DNA of 64,000 nt, taken from contig JANHCV010000001.1 of assembly GCA_025594325.1 (NCBI GenBank), forward strand, positions 4,960,001 to 5,024,000. Direction: 5' to 3'. The translations under genes were made by a program, and so were the position numbers. This document shows, piece after piece, positions 3,104 through 31,298 of the stretch (within the stretch, counting starts at the first letter, position 1; every line of letters begins with the position of its first letter). This DNA comes from Blastocladiella emersonii ATCC 22665 (taxonomy: Eukaryota; Fungi; Blastocladiomycota). The notes below the pieces were generated by a model that saw only the letters and a list, made by a program, of their open reading frames with translations, was not told the DNA's origin and did not search any database.

Positions 3104-3494
3104 GTGGACGAGTAGATTTGCTTATTTTGTTGTATTCCCTCGCACAAGATGTACCCTCTCTTGCTTCCGTGACTGTTGTCGCCGTCTTGAATCGGTTGCC
3201 TGACAGGACATGTAACTGAGGTCTTTATTGCCGCGAGTTTGCTCGTCCGTCGTCGGCACTTGCTGAGACGAAGGTTTTCGTGGTCATCGCGGCACATGCG
3301 ATGTTAAGAGTCAAAGAGCACCATGATGGCGGCCCTGATGGCGGCCCTGATGGCAACGCATTCGCAGTCCGCGACGGTCGGGACCACGCAACGCTACGCG
3401 ACGCGTGCGACGGCGAGCGGTCAACCGCAGCGGCGAAGACGGCAAAGAGCGGAGAGAAACAAAAACTGGGTATACTAGGAAGACAAACAGAACA

Positions 3495-3989
3495 TCAACA
3501 CGCCTTGACTGCCGCCGCCGGACGAAAAACGGCGGCGCAGCGGCGCTTGAGCGCGCTCCATTTGGGCGAGCGCGGCGAGAAAAAGTACTTGGCCTTAGGG
3601 TCCGGACACTCGGCGCCAACGAGCGTCTGGTCCGAGCCGAGTTCGCTGCCCTTGCTTGCCGTCAGCGAAGTCGGGCCAACAACGGCCGAGCTGCTGCCAC
3701 GACTGCAGTGGTAGCGGACCCAGCGCTTGGCCTGGGTCATGATCTCGCGGTACTTGCGCTGCTTGAGCGACGCGAGCGGGACCGACGACAAGACGATCGG
3801 CGGGAACGACATTTCGGACATCTCGGACTCGGTCTTGTTGAGCGGCGGCGGCGACGGCTTGTCGTTCTGGAGCTGCTGCCACTGCAACTGAGGAACGACG
3901 GCGGGTGTCGCGGCCGGCCCGGGGTGGTGGTGGTGATCCTGCGGCTGCTGCCACGACAGCTGGATCGGGACCACGGGCGGGGCGGAGAT
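3495..3989 (-). CDS. Hypothetical low-complexity protein, start uncertain
   Basis: ORF 3495..3974 has strong GC3 codon bias like neighbouring genes. No in-frame ATG occurs upstream of the internal MSEMSF; no domain recognised. Confidence 0.4.
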   Translation of the reverse strand: MSAPPVVPIQLSWQQPQDHHHHPGPAATPAVVPQLQWQQLQNDKPSPPPLNKTESEMSEMSFPPIVLSSVPLASLKQRKYREIMTQAKRWVRYHCSRGSSSAVVGPTSLTASKGSELGSDQTLVGAECPDPKAKYFFSPRSPKWSALKRRCAAVFRPAAAVKAC

Positions 3990-4074
3990 GGTAGTCGAGA
4001 GAGTCTCGAGGCACGAACTTACACAAGCGAAACTGTTGGTATATCAAAGGCAACAAACACCCCTACCGAGCCAC

Positions 4075-5907
4075 CTAGTCGCGGCGCTTGAGCTTGATCT
4101 CGATACCCGTGGCGTGGAGCAGGTTGCCACTGGGCGTCGTGTCGGGGACGCCTGCGAGCGCGGCCTTGTTACCCGTGACGGTCCACTCGTAGCGGAGCAG
4201 CAGCATCGACAGGATGACGCGCTGCTCGACGATCGAGAACTGCTGGCCGAGGCAGATACGCTGGCCGCCGCCGAACGGCACCCACTTGAAGTCATGTGCG
4301 CTCGGGTTCATGGCCATGACCTTGTCCTCGTTGGCGAGGAACCGCTCGGGCTTGAACTTTTCCGCGTCGTCGCCCCAGTACTCGCTTGCCGTCTGGACCG
4401 CGTGCACGTCCGACGCGACGAAGCTGCCCGTGCCGAGGTGGAGCCCGCTCGACAGCGTCACGGGCTCCATGAGCTCGCGCATCGGCATGGCGGGCACGCT
4501 CGGGTACAGGCGCATCGTCTCCTTGATGATGGCCGTGAGGTACGGCATCTGGGCCTGCTCGTCGTTGGTCGGGAACGGGAAGTCGCCGGCCGCCATGCCC
4601 TTGTCCGCGTCGCCCATGACGGCGAGCACCTCGGCGCGCGCCTTGCGCTGGATCTCCGGGTTCATGCCGAGCGAGTAGAGCACGAACGTGAGCGCGTTGG
4701 CCGTGGTGTCGTGTCCGGCGATGAAGAAGACGATGGTGTTGGCGCGCAGCTCCTCGCGCGAGAACCCGCCCGACTCGCTGGCCGTGACCATGAGCTCGAG
4801 GAGGTCCTTGGCGTCGTCGTCGTCGCCCGAGTCGTCGACGCCCGCGGCGCGGCGCTTGGCGGCCTCGGCGGCCTTGGCGTCGATCAGCGAGTAGATGAAC
4901 TTGTTGAACTCGTCGACCGACTTGGCGAACCGGGCGTAGCTGGGCAGGAACTTGTTGATGGGCGCGAGCAGGATGAACTTGGGGTTGAGCATGTCCTTCA
5001 TGACGGCGTGGTACGTCTCGACCATGGGCGTGTTGGGGTTCTCGATCGAGCCGAAGTTGGTCCCGAACGCGGCCTGCGACAGCGCGTCGAGCGTCATGCG
5101 GGTCATCCAGTCCGACACGTTGACGGTCGTGCCGCCGGCCTCGAGCTTGTCAAACTGCTCGAGCAGCGAGCGCGCGGGCGGACCGAAGATGGACGTGGCC
5201 CAGCCGCGGCGGAAGGCCGGGTTCACGACCTTGCGCTGGCGCTTCCAGTTGGGCGTCTACGAGGGAGAGGGCCGGGCGTTAGCATCCGGAGACGAGCGCT
5301 TGAGAGCGGAGTCGAAGCGTACCCGCGTCATGGCCACGTTCTGCCCGAGGAAGGCGCGGCTGACCTGGTTCGGCATCTTGGTCGCGTCCATCTTCTCGAA
5401 CTGCTCGTGGCCCGTGAGCAGCAGCTTCGAGTCCTCGGGGTTGGCCACGACGACAGTCCAACGACCAAACCTACCCGCGTTCCGCGACAACCGTGAGCAC
5501 GCGTACGCGTAGCCGAGCGACGCGCGTGTGAGAACGTACATCCAGGTGAGCCACATGCGCGGCGTCTCGTTCATACTCTTGATCGCGCCGCGACGCAGCG
5601 CGTCCTCGCGCAGCAGCTTCATCATCTCGGGCCGCCAGTTGAGGAAGCCCTCGCCCGACGTGAGGTAGTGGATCGTCTTGCGGATCGGGATGCGCGGCAG
5701 GTGGCGGAGGTGCGGCGGGACGCGGAACATTTTCCACCAGATGTGGCCCGAGACGACGGCGACGGTGGCGAGCGCCGCGAGGAGCGCCGACTTGCGCGGG
5801 CCGAGTAGCTGCGTCAGCTGCATGAGCGGGGCCAGACGCTGCTCGAGGTGCAGCGGCTCGAGGGCTTTGGCGACTGTGGTCAGCAGGTTGCTTGCAGTTG
5901 ATTCCAT
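4075..5907 (-). CDS. Cytochrome P450
   Basis: Heme motif PFGGGQRICLGQQFS, I-helix AGHDTT, K-helix ETMR, PERF, C-helix WKRQRK, and an N-terminal hydrophobic anchor. Two introns (~5471-5539, ~5259-5324). Confidence 0.95.
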
Positions 5908-24274: not shown

Positions 24275-24885
24275 TCCGGGCTAATAGATGCGCGTGCGAT
24301 AGACATCGGTTCTACGCGAGAGCAGCACTTCTTCACTCGCACACCCTCATGTCCACCTTGGACGAGAGATTTTCGCGCTGGTTTCCACGTGAACCTGCTT
24401 GATCGTGCCAGATCGAGGGGGGACGCGCCATGACCTTCCTTAATCGTTATTGCACGGCACCTCATCGCGACTACCACCGTGCTTGCAACATCACGCTGGA
24501 CTCTCGGTATCCTGCCATCGCGAGTGAGGCGCACGATCCACCGCATCAGTTCGTGATCGCTGACCTGATGGGCTTGGAAAATCCCTCGCCACACGCTAAA
24601 CTCGCCTATCATCGCCGGATCGCCCCGAGAATGAAAGCCTCTTCTCGCTCTCGCCATGAAGATCGGGCCTCGTCGGCGGGGGAGCTGCTTGTCCTCGGCG
24701 TGACGGCCAAGGACCACGATCCAAGCGAGTGGCGACGACGTTGCTAGGTCAAGGAGGGCTCAAGGAAGAGGAGCGACCACCGATTCGATCAAGGAAAGCA
24801 AGGGTGTTACTATGCAATTGTGTACTATGCAATCAAAACGATTTTAGACGAAGATGCTGTCGCGAGTCGCGAGGCGCGAAGCTCG

Positions 24886-26232
24886 TTACGCGACAAGCGC
24901 GAACACGGCGAGGGCCGCGGCGCCAGCGGCCGCGAGGATGCTGCGCGAGCCGAGCGCCGATGGCGCGGCGGTGGCGGCCATCATGTCGTTGAGGGTCTTG
25001 ACCTCCTTGGGGTTGGACACGTTGAACGACATGTACATGCCGGCCTTGAAGTGGTCGTGGACGTGGCAGTGCAGCAGCCAGTTGCCCGGGTTGTCGACGT
25101 GCGCATCGGCCCACCGGAACGTCGCCGGGAACGCCTCGAGCACGTCGCGGCGGTGGCCCTCGGACATGACCGTGATGCCGTGCCAGTGGATCGTGTGGAT
25201 GTCGACCTCGGTCCCGAACGCGAGCAGGTAGAACCGCACGTAGTCGCCCAGGTCCATCTGCAGCGTCGGCAGGTTGCCGTAGAAGTAGCCGTTGATGTTG
25301 TGCATCATGTTCGACTCCTTGAACGCGTCCGACGTGTCGAGCGCGGCCAGCGCCGTCGTGTTGGACTTGATGGTGGCGGGGAGCGCCGCAAACTCCTCGG
25401 GCGTGTACGTCGTGTTCTTGGCGTACTTGGCAATGTTGGCCTTGAGGAACGACGACTCGTTCTCGTTGCCGACGACAAACGACAAAAAGAACTCCTTCTT
25501 GACGCGGAACGAGCTCGAGTCGTACTTGGGCAGCCCGTTGTCACCCAGAATGCCCGACTCGTAGACCACGAGCGCGCCGTACAGGCCGTCGTAAATGTCC
25601 GACTCCATGACGTGCGAGTGGTACGCCCACACCATGGCGCTGCCGTCGTTCGGGCCGGGACCGGCGCGGTTGGGCACGGGCCACGTGTACGTGAACGTCT
25701 TGCCGGGGTCGACCGAGGCGCCCGCGCCCGCGTCGGGGCCCATGCCGGCGCCCTCGTTGTCCTTGTCGTAGAAGACGCCGTGCGGGTGGATCGAGTACGG
25801 GTTCGTCTTGGCCTTGTTCTTGAACACGACGCGGATCACCTGGTTGACCTCGGCGCGCAGCACGGGGCCCATGATGCCGAGGTGCTCGTCCTCGGCGCGC
25901 CGCGCGACCTGCTTCTCGAACTTGTCGTCCGTATACTGCTTGTACACGGCCTTGAGGTACTTTTTGCCGATGCGGCCCTCGGCCTGCGCCGCGAACACGG
26001 CGGGGTCGGACCCGGCCGTCGTCAGCGAGTCGCCCGAGAACCCGTCCTTGCCCGAGGGAGCGTAGTCCCACTCGACCTCCTCGGCGGCCACGTAGTAGGT
26101 CCAGATGGCGCACTTGTCGTTGCGCGGGCACGGGTTCGGCGTCGACTCGGCCTCGGCCGCGGCGACCGGGGACACCGACTGCAGCAGCACCGCGAGCAGG
26201 GCGGCGAGGAGGAAGGTATGTGTCCGCGCCAT
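24886..26232 (-). CDS. Secreted, probably GPI-anchored two-domain multicopper oxidase of ceruloplasmin/hephaestin type (putative ferroxidase)
   Basis: Intronless, ~448 aa from ATG 26232. Signal peptide MARTHTFLLAALLAVLL. Ceruloplasmin-like YYVAAEEVEWDYAP, IGKKYLKAVYKQYTD, GPVLRAEV, SIHPHG, AYHSH, ESNMMHNING, EVDIHTIHWHG, PGNWLLHCHVHDHFKAGM. Hydrophobic C-terminus. Confidence 0.92.
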   Translation of the reverse strand: MARTHTFLLAALLAVLLQSVSPVAAAEAESTPNPCPRNDKCAIWTYYVAAEEVEWDYAPSGKDGFSGDSLTTAGSDPAVFAAQAEGRIGKKYLKAVYKQYTDDKFEKQVARRAEDEHLGIMGPVLRAEVNQVIRVVFKNKAKTNPYSIHPHGVFYDKDNEGAGMGPDAGAGASVDPGKTFTYTWPVPNRAGPGPNDGSAMVWAYHSHVMESDIYDGLYGALVVYESGILGDNGLPKYDSSSFRVKKEFFLSFVVGNENESSFLKANIAKYAKNTTYTPEEFAALPATIKSNTTALAALDTSDAFKESNMMHNINGYFYGNLPTLQMDLGDYVRFYLLAFGTEVDIHTIHWHGITVMSEGHRRDVLEAFPATFRWADAHVDNPGNWLLHCHVHDHFKAGMYMSFNVSNPKEVKTLNDMMAATAAPSALGSRSILAAAGAAALAVFALVA

Positions 26233-26412
26233 GGTGATACGCCCAAAGCCCGAGCGAGACAGGAAAGAATGGAGAGCAGAGAGCTCCAGCGCCTCAGAAC
26301 GGGCGAGCTTTTGAGGCGGCACCCCGACGACAAGGGCTGTGACACGGGGAGCTTGACGAGACATTTTCTCCTTCGGATCGTCTGGTTGTTATCGATGGGC
26401 GATTCAAGCAAG

Positions 26413-26479
26413 CCTTCGCGACCCACGAGGGCCTTCGCGGCCCACGAGGACCAGCACGAGGACCTTCGCGGCCCACGTG
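26413..26479. repeat. Short imperfect tandem repeat (CCTTCGCGRCCCACGWG x3, plus a partial CACGAGGA unit)
   Basis: Units begin at 26413, 26432 and 26463, read directly; they lie in the oxidase-FTR1 intergenic region. Confidence 0.8.
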
Positions 26480-26496
26480 TTGCGATCCACATTGCC

Positions 26497-26505
26497 ATCT
26501 GATAA
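26497..26505 (+). promoter_or_regulatory. Putative iron-responsive GATA repressor site ATCTGATAA
   Basis: Exact match to the ATCWGATAA consensus of SreA/Fep1-type repressors, located between the divergent oxidase and FTR1 genes. A second GATAA (TTATCGAT, minus strand) lies at 26389-26396. Confidence 0.65.
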
Positions 26506-26664
26506 ATGGAAAGTGCCGCACCCTTGCGTCCTCACGTCCCACGACCCGCGAGCAAAGGGAGAGCGTACAAATTCCTCGCTCACGCGGAGCCCCTCTCTCG
26601 CTCGCTCCCCTCCTTCGTTAGGCCGGCGCAGCGTTCCCTCTACACTATCATACTGCTGTCCGCC

Positions 26665-27778
26665 ATGTCCGACACTGGCATTCAGAAGACGTTCGGCGTC
26701 CCCGACAAGGAGGTCGAGACCAAGTTCCGGTCAACGGGCGTCTTCGATGTGCCCGCTTACTTTATCTTCGTACGATTTTGCGTTCAGCAGCCACGGGCCG
26801 TTGGCCAGGCGAGTCGAGTCGTCCAGGACTAACGGGCGCGAGCCGGCGCGGTCCTTGTAGTCGCGCGAGGTCCTGGAAATGGCCGTCATCATCGCCGTGC
26901 TGGTCACCTTCATCAACCGCATCATGGCCAGCAACGAGAAGCTGCGCAAGCAGATGGTGCGCCAGGTGTACCTCGGCGCGATCGCTGGCACGCTCGTGTC
27001 GATTGCACTGGCCGTCATCTTCATCATCCTGTTCCAGACGCTGCGCGTCGACATCTGGGGCACCGAGACGTTCGAGATCATCTTCGAGGCCGTGTTCAAG
27101 CTGCTCGCGTGCGCGCTCATCACCATCATGGCCTTCACCATGATCAAGGTCGAGTACTGGCAGCTCAAGTGGGAGCGCAAGCTCCGCGTCGCGGCGCAGG
27201 AGGCCATGGAGACCATGAACAAGTCCAAGTGGACCATGTTCCTGTTGTCGTTCACGGTCGTGCTCCGCGAGGGCCTCGAGACGCTCGTTCTCCTCGGCGG
27301 CACCTCGTCGTCGGCGTCGGCCAAGTCCATCATCCTGCCCGCCATCACGGGGATCATCACTGGGTGCCTGATCGGCTGGCTCGTGTACAAGGGCGGCAGC
27401 ACGATCGCGCTCAAGGTGTTCGTGCAGGTCTCGATCGTGTTCCTGCTGTTCATCGCTGCCGGTCTCTTCATGGGCGGGTGCCACGAGATCGAGGAGCTGA
27501 CGGGCGGCGAGATTGTCGTGCTCGAGATCGAGGACGTCGAGTTCGACCCGGATGACGGCAACGTCTTCTTCCAGATCATCGGCGCGCTGTTCGGCTGGCG
27601 GTCCGAGTGGACCGTGGTGACGGTCGTCACCTACTTCCTGTACTGGGTCGTCGCGCTCCCGGCGCTCTACTTCTACAACCGCAAGCAGACGCGCCTGGCC
27701 GAGGCGCTCGCGCGCGAGGAGGGCCAGAGCGGCTCGACCATTGCCGGCGATGACGACGAGACCAAGCGCATCGTGTAA
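26665..27778 (+). CDS. FTR1: High-affinity iron permease FTR1 family
   Basis: Two RExxE motifs (SREVLE across intron 26770-26860; VLREGLE), about 7 hydrophobic segments, WERKL, and GALFGW. Confidence 0.95.
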
Positions 27779-27984
27779 GGCGCCAGTGCTGCCAGTAGCG
27801 TCCCCCAGTTTTGAACTTGAAGTCAACCCATACTCGCACAAATGAATTTTCTAGCTTCATTACATGCCATCTGTCTCGTTTTGAGGGGAGCACGGGTGAG
27901 CGACTGTGGAGCAGCTCGGCGACGCGTGCGTGCCCTACTTTCGCACCTTGACGACTTGCCGAACATCCTCGCTTGCACGCACTC

Positions 27985-30754: not shown

Positions 30755-31289
30755 TCCGTGGTCGGTTGCCGGCGGTCGCGACGTGCTTGTCATTTCGTTT
30801 TTCGATACATTGAGTCATGTCCATCGGCTCCTGAGCCTCCTGAGCCTGCCAGCCGTGGCGGCTGCGTGATCGCGCATGCGGTCGTGGGATGGGATGTGTG
30901 GAACTAAGAGTCCCGTGACAGACGCGTGGACGCGTTTGTCTCGCGCGGGCCGCGGGGCCAAGCCGCTGATCCCAGCACGGCCAGCGTGCCCGGCGACACG
31001 GGCCCAGGCGGCCGATCTTGCGGTCCCAACGGCGCACCCACTGGCACTCCGCGGCCGCTGTCGGAACGCCCCCAGATGCCGCTACTGTGGAGCGAGCATC
31101 CCATCCGTGCTATCGATAGGAGATTGCGGGCGGGAGCCACCGAGTCCCTGTGGCACCGCAGAAGCTTCGGGCTTGCAGTCTCGAACACGCCACACGCCTT
31201 CCAGGCCAGGCCTAGATGCTATCTGATGATACGCGCAAGTTTACGTGCAACGCGCGTCGGGACAGCACTGAGCAATTCCGCCTTCCTTC

Positions 31290-31298
31290 ATCTGATAG
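31290..31298 (+). promoter_or_regulatory. Putative GATA site ATCTGATAG upstream of the ZIP transporter
   Basis: 8/9 match to ATCWGATAA ~110 bp upstream of the ATG. Further GATA-like words lie at ~31111-31120 (CTATCGATAG) and 31221-31231 (ATCTGATGATA). Confidence 0.45.

What the first reader, a model, noticed from the sequence alone, without database searches (positions are those of the whole stretch)
24886..26232. Minimal ceruloplasmin: domains 1+6 only, with complete Cu ligands and Fe(II)-site residues, predicted homotrimer
Seen: only two cupredoxin domains (~400 aa mature). Domain 1 has SIHPHG and AYHSH; domain 2 has HTIHWHG and HCHVHDHFKAGM (T1 His/Cys/His/Met). Established (recalled human ceruloplasmin numbering): the trinuclear ligands come from domain 1 (H101/H103/H161/H163) and domain 6, and the labile Fe site uses E272, E935, H940 and D1025. 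Equivalents are present here: FKESNMMH (E935/H940), D in HVHDH (D1025), and E in TEVDIH (E272/E971 type, supplied by a neighbouring domain pair). Two-domain MCOs such as SLAC are trimers, and a trimeric two-domain ancestor of ceruloplasmin has been proposed. Inference: this is a eukaryotic surface-anchored trimer with three T1, three trinuclear and three Fe sites, resembling that proposed ancestor. The C-terminus (..PSALGSRSILAAAGAAALAVFALVA) looks like a GPI signal.
Basis: partly seen in the sequence, partly recalled or inferred. Interest (0 to 1): 0.85.

Follow-up and report, generated by a model that had tools for sequence, protein, structure and literature searches.

The report
Two-domain ceruloplasmin-type ferroxidase beside FTR1
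A water-mould-like (blastoclad) fungus carries an intact gene for a one-third-size relative of the blood copper protein ceruloplasmin, placed head-to-head with an iron permease gene, so it is very probably the copper oxidase of an iron-uptake machine and one of the closest living stand-ins for the long-postulated small ancestor of ceruloplasmin.

Summary
Window 24886-26232 (minus strand) is one uninterrupted 448-codon gene for a signal peptide, two cupredoxin domains and a hydrophobic C-terminal tail. All 8 trinuclear-cluster His, the type-1 His/Cys/His/Met set and the four ceruloplasmin Fe(II)-site residues (E935/H940/E971(=E272)/D1025) are in place by alignment to human ceruloplasmin.

It is not "domains 1+6". 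It is one complete ceruloplasmin repeat unit, and no further cupredoxin coding lies in the 64 kb.

It is not unique:
- At least 570 prokaryotic species genomes encode such units.
- So do early-diverging fungi, an ichthyosporean, a choanoflagellate, stramenopile algae, an amoebozoan and a euglenid.
- I found no characterised or solved member.

Functional evidence points to iron uptake:
- The gene is divergently paired with FTR1, as in Catenaria and Blastocladiella britannica.
- An ATCTGATAA iron-GATA site lies between the two genes and recurs upstream of three orthologues.
- In three chytrid-lineage genomes the same oxidase is inserted into extracellular loop 6 of FTR1.

In trees the eukaryotic two-domain clade is sister to all animal six-domain repeats (100/96), but an AU test does not reject the alternative. 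The homotrimer and the GPI anchor are inferred, not tested.

The scan had already noted this same stretch (s1-076263).

The parts
24886..26232 (-). Complete single-exon CDS (448 aa plus stop at 24886-24888) of the two-domain ceruloplasmin-type multicopper oxidase
   Evidence: ORF list; Pfam Cu-oxidase_3 and Cu-oxidase_2; E 6e-194 to ceruloplasmin; identical 448-aa product in the protein collection; AF2 model with pLDDT 89.8
26158..26232 (-). N-terminal signal-peptide-like segment (residues 1 to about 25, MARTHTFLLAALLAVLLQSVSPVAA)
   Evidence: Hydrophobic window at residues 2-27; all orthologues begin with a comparable hydrophobic leader. No signal-peptide predictor was available.
25513..26106 (-). 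Cupredoxin domain 1 (residues about 43-240). Carries four trinuclear-cluster His (H149, H151, H205, H207) and no type-1 site (H-S-H).
   Evidence: Alignment to ceruloplasmin H101/H103/H161/H163; these positions are invariant in 115 homologues
25012..25497 (-). Cupredoxin domain 2 (residues about 246-407). Type-1 Cu ligands H346/C389/H394/M399; cluster His H349/H351/H388/H390; Fe(II)-site residues E306, H311, E342, D393.
   Evidence: Alignment to human ceruloplasmin domain 6 residue by residue; census
24889..25011 (-). C-terminal tail (residues 408-448): Ser/Ala-rich spacer, then 17 hydrophobic residues ILAAAGAAALAVFALVA ending at the C-terminus (24889-24939). Candidate GPI-attachment signal.
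   Evidence: Hydropathy; pLDDT below 50 for residues 423-448; same design in Catenaria, B. britannica and Allomyces, whereas the three prokaryotic-type homologues in the alignment end just after the domain
26233..26664 (.). 432-bp shared divergent promoter region between the oxidase and FTR1 start codons
   Evidence: Sequence
26497..26505 (+). ATCTGATAA, which matches the fungal iron-responsive GATA-repressor site ATCWGATAA
   Evidence: Only match in the 64 kb, 0.11 expected; the same 9-mer lies upstream of the oxidase gene in Catenaria (two copies), Allomyces and Paraphysoderma
26665..26769 (+). FTR1 iron permease, exon 1 (35 codons, ending ...VPAYFIF)
   Evidence: Reading of the sequence; the spliced product aligns from residue 1 with Catenaria FTR1
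26770..26860 (+). FTR1 intron (GTACG ... CTAAC ... TAG)
   Evidence: Sequence. Splicing joins FIF|SREVLEMAV and restores the first REXLE motif. No transcript data.
26861..27778 (+). FTR1 exon 2 (through the stop). The whole product is 340 aa with seven predicted TM segments and REVLE and REGLE motifs.
   Evidence: Pfam PF03239, E 1e-34; translation and TM scan

Best explanation
The gene encodes a secreted, membrane-tethered (probably GPI-anchored and N-glycosylated) type-B two-domain multicopper oxidase of the ceruloplasmin/hephaestin lineage. It acts as the ferroxidase partner of the divergently transcribed FTR1 permease in an iron-repressed, high-affinity reductive iron-uptake system. It fills the role that three-domain Fet3 has in yeast and six-domain FOX1 has in Chlamydomonas. 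Proposed mechanism follows; only the presence and position of the residues are shown, the steps are inferred. Three subunits form a ring like the six domains of ceruloplasmin. Each trinuclear Cu cluster is built at a subunit interface from H149/H151/H205/H207 of one chain and H349/H351/H388/H390 of the neighbouring chain. Fe(II) binds at E306/H311/D393, plus E342 supplied by the neighbouring subunit. Its electron goes to the type-1 Cu (H346/C389/H394/M399) and through the H388-C389-H390 triad to the cluster, where O2 is reduced to water. Fe(III) is then passed to FTR1 (REVLE/REGLE motifs and the acidic extracellular loop 6) without release to the bulk solution.
For: Shown: a complete 2-domain ORF with every Cu ligand and all four Fe-site residues. 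A confident fold (pLDDT 89.8, pTM 0.84) whose best structural matches are ceruloplasmin (TMq 0.73, rmsd 2.3 A, 39% identity). FTR1 lies 432 bp away on the other strand. The same head-to-head pair exists in Catenaria anguillulae and Blastocladiella britannica. The only ATCWGATAA site in the window is in the shared promoter, and it recurs upstream of the orthologue in Catenaria, Allomyces and Paraphysoderma. Rosetta-stone evidence: in Nowakowskiella, Hyaloraphidium and Cladochytrium the orthologous oxidase, with all ligands and E/H/E/D, is encoded on the same strand between FTR1 TM6 and TM7. In Nowakowskiella the junction lies inside one uninterrupted exon. In yeast Ftr1 that loop 6 is extracellular, carries the DXXE motif and interacts with Fet3 (PMC11817551). 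A ceruloplasmin-type oxidase working with FTR1 is established for Chlamydomonas FOX1/FTR1 (PMC3759009). Inferred: the 4+4 split of cluster ligands between the two domains, colinear with ceruloplasmin domains 1 and 6, cannot close a cluster within one two-domain chain. Papers read here describe 2dMCOs as trimers with the cluster shared between protomers (PMC13151041; PMC11761707).
Against: There is no biochemical, expression or oligomer evidence for this protein or any close relative. FTR1 is not within 6 kb of the orthologue in Allomyces, Paraphysoderma or Syncephalis. B. britannica lacks the exact GATA 9-mer. Prokaryotic relatives have no consistent iron-related neighbours; one of 80 loci has an FTR1-like gene. 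The E/H/E/D residues are also those used by ceruloplasmin for amine substrates, so they do not prove Fe(II) specificity. The GPI anchor rests on pattern only.
Confidence: 0.72

Rival explanations
1. It is an active trimeric two-domain multicopper oxidase, but its physiological substrate is not iron. It would be a laccase-like phenol/amine oxidase, a Mn(II) oxidase or a cuprous oxidase, used for wall or pigment chemistry or copper detoxification, and the position next to FTR1 would be incidental.
For: Characterised bacterial type-B two-domain oxidases behave as laccases (PMC13151041), and an archaeal one oxidises hydroxylamine (PMC11761707). Automatic names for relatives include 'manganese oxidase'. 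About half of the sampled single-unit relatives lack E/H/E/D. Orthologues in Allomyces, Paraphysoderma and Syncephalis are not next to FTR1.
Against: E/H/E/D is kept in all blastoclad and chytrid members. The FTR1 pairing is conserved in three blastoclad genomes. The oxidase is inserted into FTR1 in three chytrid-lineage genomes. An iron-GATA site lies upstream even in orthologues that are not linked to FTR1.
Confidence: 0.15
2. The two-domain gene is a secondary reduction or a foreign acquisition rather than a relic. It would have been cut down from a six-domain ceruloplasmin-like gene (domains 1 and 6 fused after loss of 2-5), or taken from bacteria by horizontal transfer, so it would say nothing about the ancestor of ceruloplasmin.
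For: The AU test does not reject a tree in which all six-domain units form one clade apart from all two-domain proteins (p 0.115 and 0.109). Prokaryotic relatives are 42-48% identical and very numerous. The eukaryotic distribution is patchy, and two stramenopile algae sit within the fungal clade. The trees are unrooted.
Against: In whole-unit and split-domain trees the fungal protein never groups with animal unit 1 or unit 3; its nearest rows are other two-domain proteins. The eukaryotic two-domain clade (99/93) excludes every sampled sequence of named prokaryotic origin (one unnamed metagenomic protein, P0018, sits inside it) and is sister to the animal clade with 100/96 support. Members carry eukaryote-specific C-terminal anchors, and members in other species have introns. 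The gene sits on a 5.1-Mb contig next to an intron-containing FTR1.
Confidence: 0.3
3. The ORF is only part of a larger gene, with further cupredoxin exons giving four or six domains, or it is an inactive remnant.
For: No transcript data could be obtained. The neighbouring FTR1 gene shows that this genome has introns.
Against: A signal peptide at one end and a hydrophobic tail plus stop at the other. No other cupredoxin-coding sequence in 64 kb. The FTR1 start lies only 432 bp upstream. Orthologous gene models of 434-445 aa in three other blastoclads are colinear end to end. All catalytic residues are intact.
Confidence: 0.03

Closest known systems
Ceruloplasmin / hephaestin (animal six-domain multicopper ferroxidases)
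   Same: Each two-domain repeat is 38-44% identical to this protein. The Cu ligands are those of domains 1 and 6. The same E/H/E/D Fe(II) site is present. The fold superposes at rmsd 2.3-2.8 A. Membrane-tethered forms exist (GPI-ceruloplasmin, TM-hephaestin; the GPI form is noted in the abstracts listed)..
   Different: This protein has one repeat unit per chain instead of three, so three chains are presumably needed. If so, the assembly would have three trinuclear clusters and three equivalent Fe sites, against one cluster in ceruloplasmin. The partner gene is the importer FTR1, not the exporter ferroportin.
Chlamydomonas FOX1-FTR1 high-affinity iron uptake
   Same: A ceruloplasmin-type (not Fet3-type) oxidase works with an FTR1 permease and is induced by iron deficiency (PMC3759009).
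   Different: FOX1 is a six-domain monomer whose cluster lies between domains 2 and 3 (PMC3600357). Green-algal-type units lie far from the fungal clade in the trees.
Yeast Fet3p-Ftr1p ferroxidase-permease complex
   Same: Same logic: a surface multicopper ferroxidase with an FTR1 permease carrying two REXLE motifs. The divergent gene pair with an iron-responsive promoter resembles what I recall of fetC/ftrA-type pairs in other fungi (recalled, not checked here). Loop 6 of Ftr1 contacts the oxidase (PMC11817551).
   Different: Fet3 is a three-domain monomeric laccase-type oxidase with a different Fe site (the review read names E185; D283 and D409 are from memory) and a C-terminal TM helix. It is not a close homologue of this protein.
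SLAC-type and other bacterial/archaeal type-B two-domain oxidases (homotrimers)
   Same: Two cupredoxin domains, type-1 Cu in the C-terminal domain, cluster ligands split 4+4, and obligate trimers with the cluster between protomers (PMC13151041, PMC11761707).
   Different: Only distant: E about 1e-10 to 1e-13 over domain 1 only, TMq 0.45-0.49. They have a shorter unit of about 280 aa, no E/H/E/D site and no eukaryotic anchor. Whether the characterised Cellvibrio enzyme ('superfamily N') belongs to the ceruloplasmin-like group could not be determined.
Uncharacterised prokaryotic ceruloplasmin-like two-domain oxidases (about 380 aa; Acidobacteriota, Actinomycetota, Chloroflexota, Pseudomonadota, ammonia-oxidising archaea)
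   Same: 42-48% identical over the whole unit. Most keep all Cu ligands and about half keep E/H/E/D.
   Different: The three examined in an alignment end just after domain 2, with no C-terminal anchor. There is no consistent FTR1 linkage. They fall outside the eukaryotic two-domain clade in the trees.

Membership tests
Multicopper oxidase (blue copper oxidase) superfamily | Cupredoxin domains recognised by the Cu-oxidase profiles | tested here: met
   PF07732, E 3e-13, and PF07731, E 2e-18; AF2 model is a beta-sandwich pair with pLDDT 89.8
Multicopper oxidase (blue copper oxidase) superfamily | Four HXH motifs giving 8 His for the trinuclear cluster, plus a type-1 His-Cys-His(-Met) set joined by an H-C-H triad | tested here: met
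   H149/H151, H205/H207, H349/H351, H388/H390; H346, C389, H394, M399
Ceruloplasmin / hephaestin / factor V-VIII A-domain lineage | Full-length homology of a two-domain unit to the A repeat | tested here: met
   Aligns over residues 41-407 to each of the three ceruloplasmin repeats (E 6e-194); Foldseek TMq 0.73, 39% identity
Ceruloplasmin / hephaestin / factor V-VIII A-domain lineage | Six cupredoxin domains (three repeats) in one chain | tested here: not met
   Only one unit in the ORF and none elsewhere in the 64 kb; orthologues are 434-491 aa
Ceruloplasmin-type ferroxidase | Fe(II)-site residues equivalent to E272(E971)/E935/H940/D1025 | tested here: met
   E342/E306/H311/D393 by alignment to 1kcw_A; conserved in blastoclad and chytrid members
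Ceruloplasmin-type ferroxidase | Measured Fe(II) oxidase activity | not testable with these tools
   Needs enzyme assays
Type-B two-domain multicopper oxidase | Two domains, type-1 Cu only in the C-terminal domain, cluster ligands 4+4 from the two domains | tested here: met
   Domain 1 has H-S-H (no Cys) and domain 2 has H-C-H (sequence)
Type-B two-domain multicopper oxidase | Homotrimer with the cluster at subunit interfaces | not testable with these tools
   Only single-chain prediction was available. Inferred from colinearity with ceruloplasmin domains 1/6 and from known 2dMCO trimers.
Ferroxidase-permease (Fet3/Ftr1-like) iron uptake system | An FTR1-family permease with two REXLE motifs, genetically coupled to the oxidase | tested here: met
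   PF03239, E 1e-34; REVLE and REGLE motifs; head-to-head at 432 bp. The pair is conserved in two other blastoclads, and the oxidase is fused into FTR1 in three chytrid-lineage genomes.
Ferroxidase-permease (Fet3/Ftr1-like) iron uptake system | Iron-responsive co-expression | tested here: inconclusive
   An ATCWGATAA site lies in the shared promoter and upstream of three orthologues, but no expression data could be obtained.
Ferroxidase-permease (Fet3/Ftr1-like) iron uptake system | Fet3-type three-domain oxidase | tested here: not met
   Two domains of ceruloplasmin type
GPI-anchored surface protein | N-terminal signal peptide plus a C-terminal signal (small omega-region residues, short spacer, hydrophobic tail ending the protein) | tested here: inconclusive
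   The pattern is present (AATAAPSALGSRS followed by 17 hydrophobic residues with no cytosolic tail), but no predictor or experiment was available.

The most novel reading that the evidence does not exclude
The two-domain oxidases of blastoclads, chytrids and ichthyosporeans are direct descendants of the unduplicated opisthokont gene whose triplication gave animal ceruloplasmin, hephaestin and factors V/VIII. They still work as the postulated ancestral homotrimer with three type-1 coppers, three trinuclear clusters and three Fe sites. That trimer docks onto FTR1 permeases, and in chytrids it is built into them, which implies a 3:3 oxidase-permease assembly.
Probability: 0.4. Interest if true: 0.85.

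Novelty: new variant of a known kind. Interest (0 to 1): 0.7.

Why it matters
The origin of ceruloplasmin from a trimeric two-domain copper protein has been a textbook hypothesis for about 30 years (Ryden and Hunt; Murphy; Nakamura and Go, as cited in PMC3600357). Its support has come mainly from distant bacterial enzymes. Papers read here still state that eukaryotes have only three- or six-domain forms (PMC3600357) and that two-domain forms occur in bacteria and archaea (PMC13151041).

A eukaryotic, ceruloplasmin-type two-domain family that is the tree-sister of the animal repeats makes that hypothesis experimentally testable.

It also defines a third kind of ferroxidase partner for FTR1, besides Fet3 and FOX1. 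The natural FTR1-oxidase fusions in chytrids offer a ready-made complex for the structural work on ferroxidase-permease coupling that the 2025 review (PMC11817551) says is lacking.

Tried and rejected
1. Transcript evidence. The look-up of sequencing runs listed no RNA run for 24600-27900.

2. Trimer modelling. Only single-chain AF2 was available, so the oligomer is an inference.

3. 'Domains 1+6 chimera' rejected. The whole unit scores best on ceruloplasmin domains 3-4. Split-domain trees and path lengths show no affinity of the N-domain for animal unit 1. The C-domain is only mildly closer to unit 3, as expected from shared ligands.

4. Prokaryotic gene neighbourhoods (80 loci). The commonest neighbour is shared by only 11 loci. 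Annotated neighbours are response regulators, TPR regulators, FG-GAP proteins and proteins with no Pfam family. This gave no functional lead. One call failed on wrong coordinates.

5. Whether the characterised Cellvibrio CjMCO ('superfamily N') belongs to this family. The sequence was not retrievable. The published ligand numbering suggests a different spacing, so this is undetermined. Nmar_1354 (9CCK) is not a close relative (TMq 0.47).

6. Literature searches found no paper on eukaryotic ceruloplasmin-like two-domain oxidases or on natural FTR1-oxidase fusions. The library lacks many subscription papers (e.g. Graeff 2020, Nakamura and Go 2005), so the absence is not proof.

7. The protein atlas search added nothing beyond 'ferroxidase' neighbours.

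8. Whether this genome lacks a Fet3-type oxidase could not be tested from one window.
Full report
**What is there**

On the minus strand an ORF runs from 26364 to 24886. From the ATG at 26232 it gives 448 residues. The public protein collection holds exactly this product on a 5.1-Mb contig (P0001).

Pfam sees one Cu-oxidase_3 and one Cu-oxidase_2 domain and nothing else. phmmer against all PDB chains aligns residues 41-407 colinearly with each of the three two-domain repeats of ceruloplasmin (overall E 6e-194; 176, 244 and 225 bits for domains 1-2, 3-4 and 5-6). It also aligns with factors V and VIII. SLAC-type two-domain laccases match only domain 1, at about E 1e-13.

An AF2 model built on 115 homologues is confident (pLDDT 89.8, pTM 0.84). 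Only the leader and the last 26 residues are disordered. Foldseek places ceruloplasmin first (TMq 0.73, rmsd 2.3-2.8 A, 39% identity). SLAC and the archaeal Nmar_1354 reach only TMq 0.45-0.49. No stand-alone ceruloplasmin-type two-domain oxidase has a solved structure.

**Ligands**

I used the alignment to human ceruloplasmin 1kcw_A, which carries mature numbering.
- H149/H151 = H101/H103
- H205/H207 = H161/H163
- E306 = E935
- H311 = H940
- E342 = E971, the position that is E272 in domain 2
- H346 = H975
- H349/H351 = H978/H980
- H388-C389-H390 = H1020-C1021-H1022
- D393 = D1025
- H394 = H1026
- M399 = M1031

Domain 1 reads H-S-H where domain 2 reads H-C-H, so only domain 2 has a type-1 site. 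That makes this a type-B two-domain oxidase.

The protein has a hydrophobic leader and four N-glycosylation sequons. Its tail is a Ser/Ala-rich spacer followed by 17 hydrophobic residues that end the protein, with no cytosolic residues. Catenaria, Blastocladiella britannica and Allomyces share that tail. Paraphysoderma and a choanoflagellate instead have a TM helix plus a cytosolic tail. The three prokaryotic-type homologues in the alignment stop right after domain 2. A GPI anchor is therefore plausible but untested.

**Is it complete?**

tblastn of the protein against the whole window finds only itself. The FTR1 start codon lies 432 bp upstream on the other strand. Orthologous gene models in three other blastoclads are 434-445 aa and colinear. 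A six-domain product is therefore very unlikely.

Transcript data could not be obtained. An in-frame ATG 44 codons upstream (26364) cannot be formally excluded.

**Organism and family**

The closest proteins are 'Cupredoxin' entries of Blastocladiella britannica (69%), Catenaria anguillulae (66%) and Allomyces macrogynus (53%). The window therefore comes from a blastoclad fungus with 62-73% G+C.

The family is large:
- Hundreds of metagenomic and bacterial proteins of about 380 aa are 42-48% identical.
The best 80 come from Acidobacteriota, Actinomycetota, Chloroflexota, Pseudomonadota, Verrucomicrobiota and ammonia-oxidising archaea.
- Of 121 sampled single-unit proteins, 113 keep all eight cluster His, 120 keep the type-1 set, and 57 keep E/H/E/D.

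Eukaryotic members:
- Paraphysoderma (Blastocladiomycota) and Quaeritorhiza (Chytridiomycota)
- Syncephalis and Thamnocephalis (Zoopagomycota)
- Calcarisporiella, and Endogone (taken to be Mucoromycota; lineage not looked up)
- Tribonema and Phaeothamnion (stramenopile algae)
- Hartaetosiga (choanoflagellate) and Amoebidium (ichthyosporean)
- Soliformovum (amoebozoan) and Ploeotia (euglenid)

The architecture with a complete ligand set is thus common. I found no characterised member. The papers I could read say that eukaryotes have only three- or six-domain forms (PMC3600357) and that two-domain forms occur in bacteria and archaea (PMC13151041).

**Function: link to FTR1**

The plus-strand neighbour is an FTR1 iron permease (PF03239, E 1e-34). 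Its CDS is 26665-26769 plus 26861-27778. The intron has GTACG, a CTAAC branch point and TAG. Its removal joins FIF|SREVLEMAV and so restores the first REXLE motif; the second (REGLE) is in exon 2. The 340-aa product has seven predicted TM segments.

The same head-to-head FTR1-oxidase pair is present in Catenaria and B. britannica. It is absent within 6 kb in Allomyces and Paraphysoderma. In Syncephalis two oxidase paralogues face each other instead.

The only ATCWGATAA in the 64 kb lies in the shared promoter at 26497-26505, against 0.11 expected. From memory, this is the consensus of the fungal iron-responsive GATA repressors (SreA/Fep1 type). The same 9-mer occurs twice in the Catenaria intergenic region and once within 330 bp upstream of the oxidase in Allomyces and within 125 bp in Paraphysoderma. 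It occurs nowhere else in those 13-14 kb loci.

**Function: natural fusions**

A profile search returned longer proteins that carry both domains. At the DNA level, on one strand and in order:
- Cladochytrium replicatum has FTR1 TM1-6 (L088 2307-3087), the oxidase (3370-4579), then FTR1 TM7 and tail (4559-4915).
- Hyaloraphidium curvatum has FTR1 (L086 3102-4001), the oxidase (4179-5491), then TM7 (5703-5789).
- Nowakowskiella has FTR1 (L087 495-1341), then the oxidase (1483-2621), which runs to within about 100 bp of the contig end.

In Nowakowskiella one uninterrupted exon (760-1851) spans the junction, so the fusion is not a gene-model artefact. The annotated models in the other two species are truncated.

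The fused oxidase units keep all Cu ligands and E/H/E/D (the partial Nowakowskiella model ends before the type-1 Met). They form a clade inside the fungal two-domain group. The oxidase therefore sits in the TM6-TM7 loop. In yeast Ftr1 this is extracellular loop 6, which carries the DXXE motif, interacts with Fet3 and takes part in Fe(III) channelling (PMC11817551).

A ceruloplasmin-type oxidase working with FTR1 is already established for Chlamydomonas FOX1/FTR1 (PMC3759009). Taken together, these results make 'ferroxidase partner of FTR1' the best-supported function.

**Quaternary structure**

In ceruloplasmin the cluster lies between domain 1 and domain 6, that is, between different repeats. 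Here a single repeat carries both half-sets. A cluster can therefore only form between chains, as in the known two-domain oxidases described as trimers in PMC13151041 and PMC11761707. E342 would then serve the Fe site of the neighbouring subunit, as E272 and E971 do in ceruloplasmin. This is a strong inference, but it was not computed here.

**Evolution**

I cut 347 repeat units from 266 proteins and built trees. In the first careful tree (84 rows):
- The 30 animal units form one clade (100/99).
- Nine fungal proteins, two stramenopile proteins and one metagenomic two-domain protein form another (99/97).
- The two clades are sisters at 82/88.

After I added the three fusion units, Amoebidium, Endogone and Soliformovum (75 rows), the sister grouping rose to 100/96.

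AU tests of the alternative, in which all six-domain units form one clade, gave p 0.115 and 0.109, so it is not rejected. The trees are unrooted.

Split-domain trees give no sign of a domain 1 + domain 6 deletion chimera.

The three units of a Paulinella six-domain protein are each other's closest relatives (100/100), and each keeps a near-complete ligand set. Triplication has therefore probably happened more than once.

The reading 'living relative of the pre-triplication ancestor' is favoured but not secured.

**Verdict**

- Right: the architecture, the ligands, the surface anchoring design, and probably the ancestor-like position.
- Wrong: 'domains 1+6'.
- Overstated: uniqueness.
- Untested: the trimer and the GPI anchor.

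This is a new variant of known kinds (a type-B two-domain oxidase and a ferroxidase-permease system) in an uncharacterised, widespread eukaryotic family. The scan's own notes already flag the same stretch as an FTR1/two-domain-oxidase module (s1-076263) and flag the GATA site (s1-076631). I tested both here.

Noticed in passing
L088:2307-4915, L086:3102-5789, L087:495-2621: In Cladochytrium replicatum, Hyaloraphidium curvatum and Nowakowskiella sp. the ceruloplasmin-type two-domain oxidase is encoded inside the FTR1 gene, between TM6 and TM7 (extracellular loop 6). This gives one permease-oxidase polypeptide. The annotated models P0210 and P0252 are truncated at one end. I found no paper describing this.
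   Followed up: yes
P0219 (Amoebidium parasiticum transcript): A ZIP-family metal transporter (residues 14-300) is fused to a complete ceruloplasmin-type two-domain oxidase (about 320-697) with all ligands and E/H/E/D. A ferroxidase fused to a divalent-metal importer is unexpected. A chimeric transcript assembly is not excluded.
   Followed up: partly
P0122 (Paulinella micropora, 1275 aa): A six-domain protein in which all three repeats keep the type-1 set, E/H/E/D and a complete or near-complete cluster His set (HHYHHHHH / HHHHHHHH / HHHHHHHH). Its three units are each other's nearest relatives (100/100). This points to an independent, recent triplication and resembles the hypothetical 'three clusters plus three type-1 sites' six-domain ancestor.
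   Followed up: partly
L006-L085 (prokaryotic loci); L015, L019, L026, L031, L038, L045, L046, L065: Ceruloplasmin-like two-domain oxidases are widespread in bacteria and in ammonia-oxidising archaea (Nitrosopumilus, Nitrososphaera, Nitrosotalea). They are distinct from the solved Nmar_1354 lineage. Their neighbourhoods are heterogeneous. One locus (L030) has an FTR1-like gene directly downstream.
   Followed up: partly
window 31220-31297: The only other ATCWGATA matches in the window (31220 on the minus strand, 31290 on the plus strand) lie about 4.7 kb from the oxidase-FTR1 promoter. Another scan note places a ZupT-like ZIP transporter there. This is consistent with a small local iron regulon.
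   Followed up: partly
L004:4014-7530: Syncephalis fuscata has two paralogous two-domain oxidases (514 and 491 aa) arranged head-to-head, with no FTR1 nearby. The 491-aa paralogue examined, and its Thamnocephalis relative, have altered Fe-site residues (EHMD, EWFS).
   Followed up: no
window 26233-26364: The oxidase ORF stays open for 44 codons upstream of the presumed start, up to another ATG at 26364. That extension has no counterpart in the orthologues and would bury the signal peptide.
   Followed up: partly
P0262, P0242, P0216, P0246: Other domain fusions of the same oxidase unit: SCO1/SenC copper-chaperone domain plus oxidase (origin unknown), DinB plus oxidase and TPR plus oxidase (metagenomic; origin not determined), and an EGF-like domain plus oxidase in the amoebozoan Soliformovum.
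   Followed up: no
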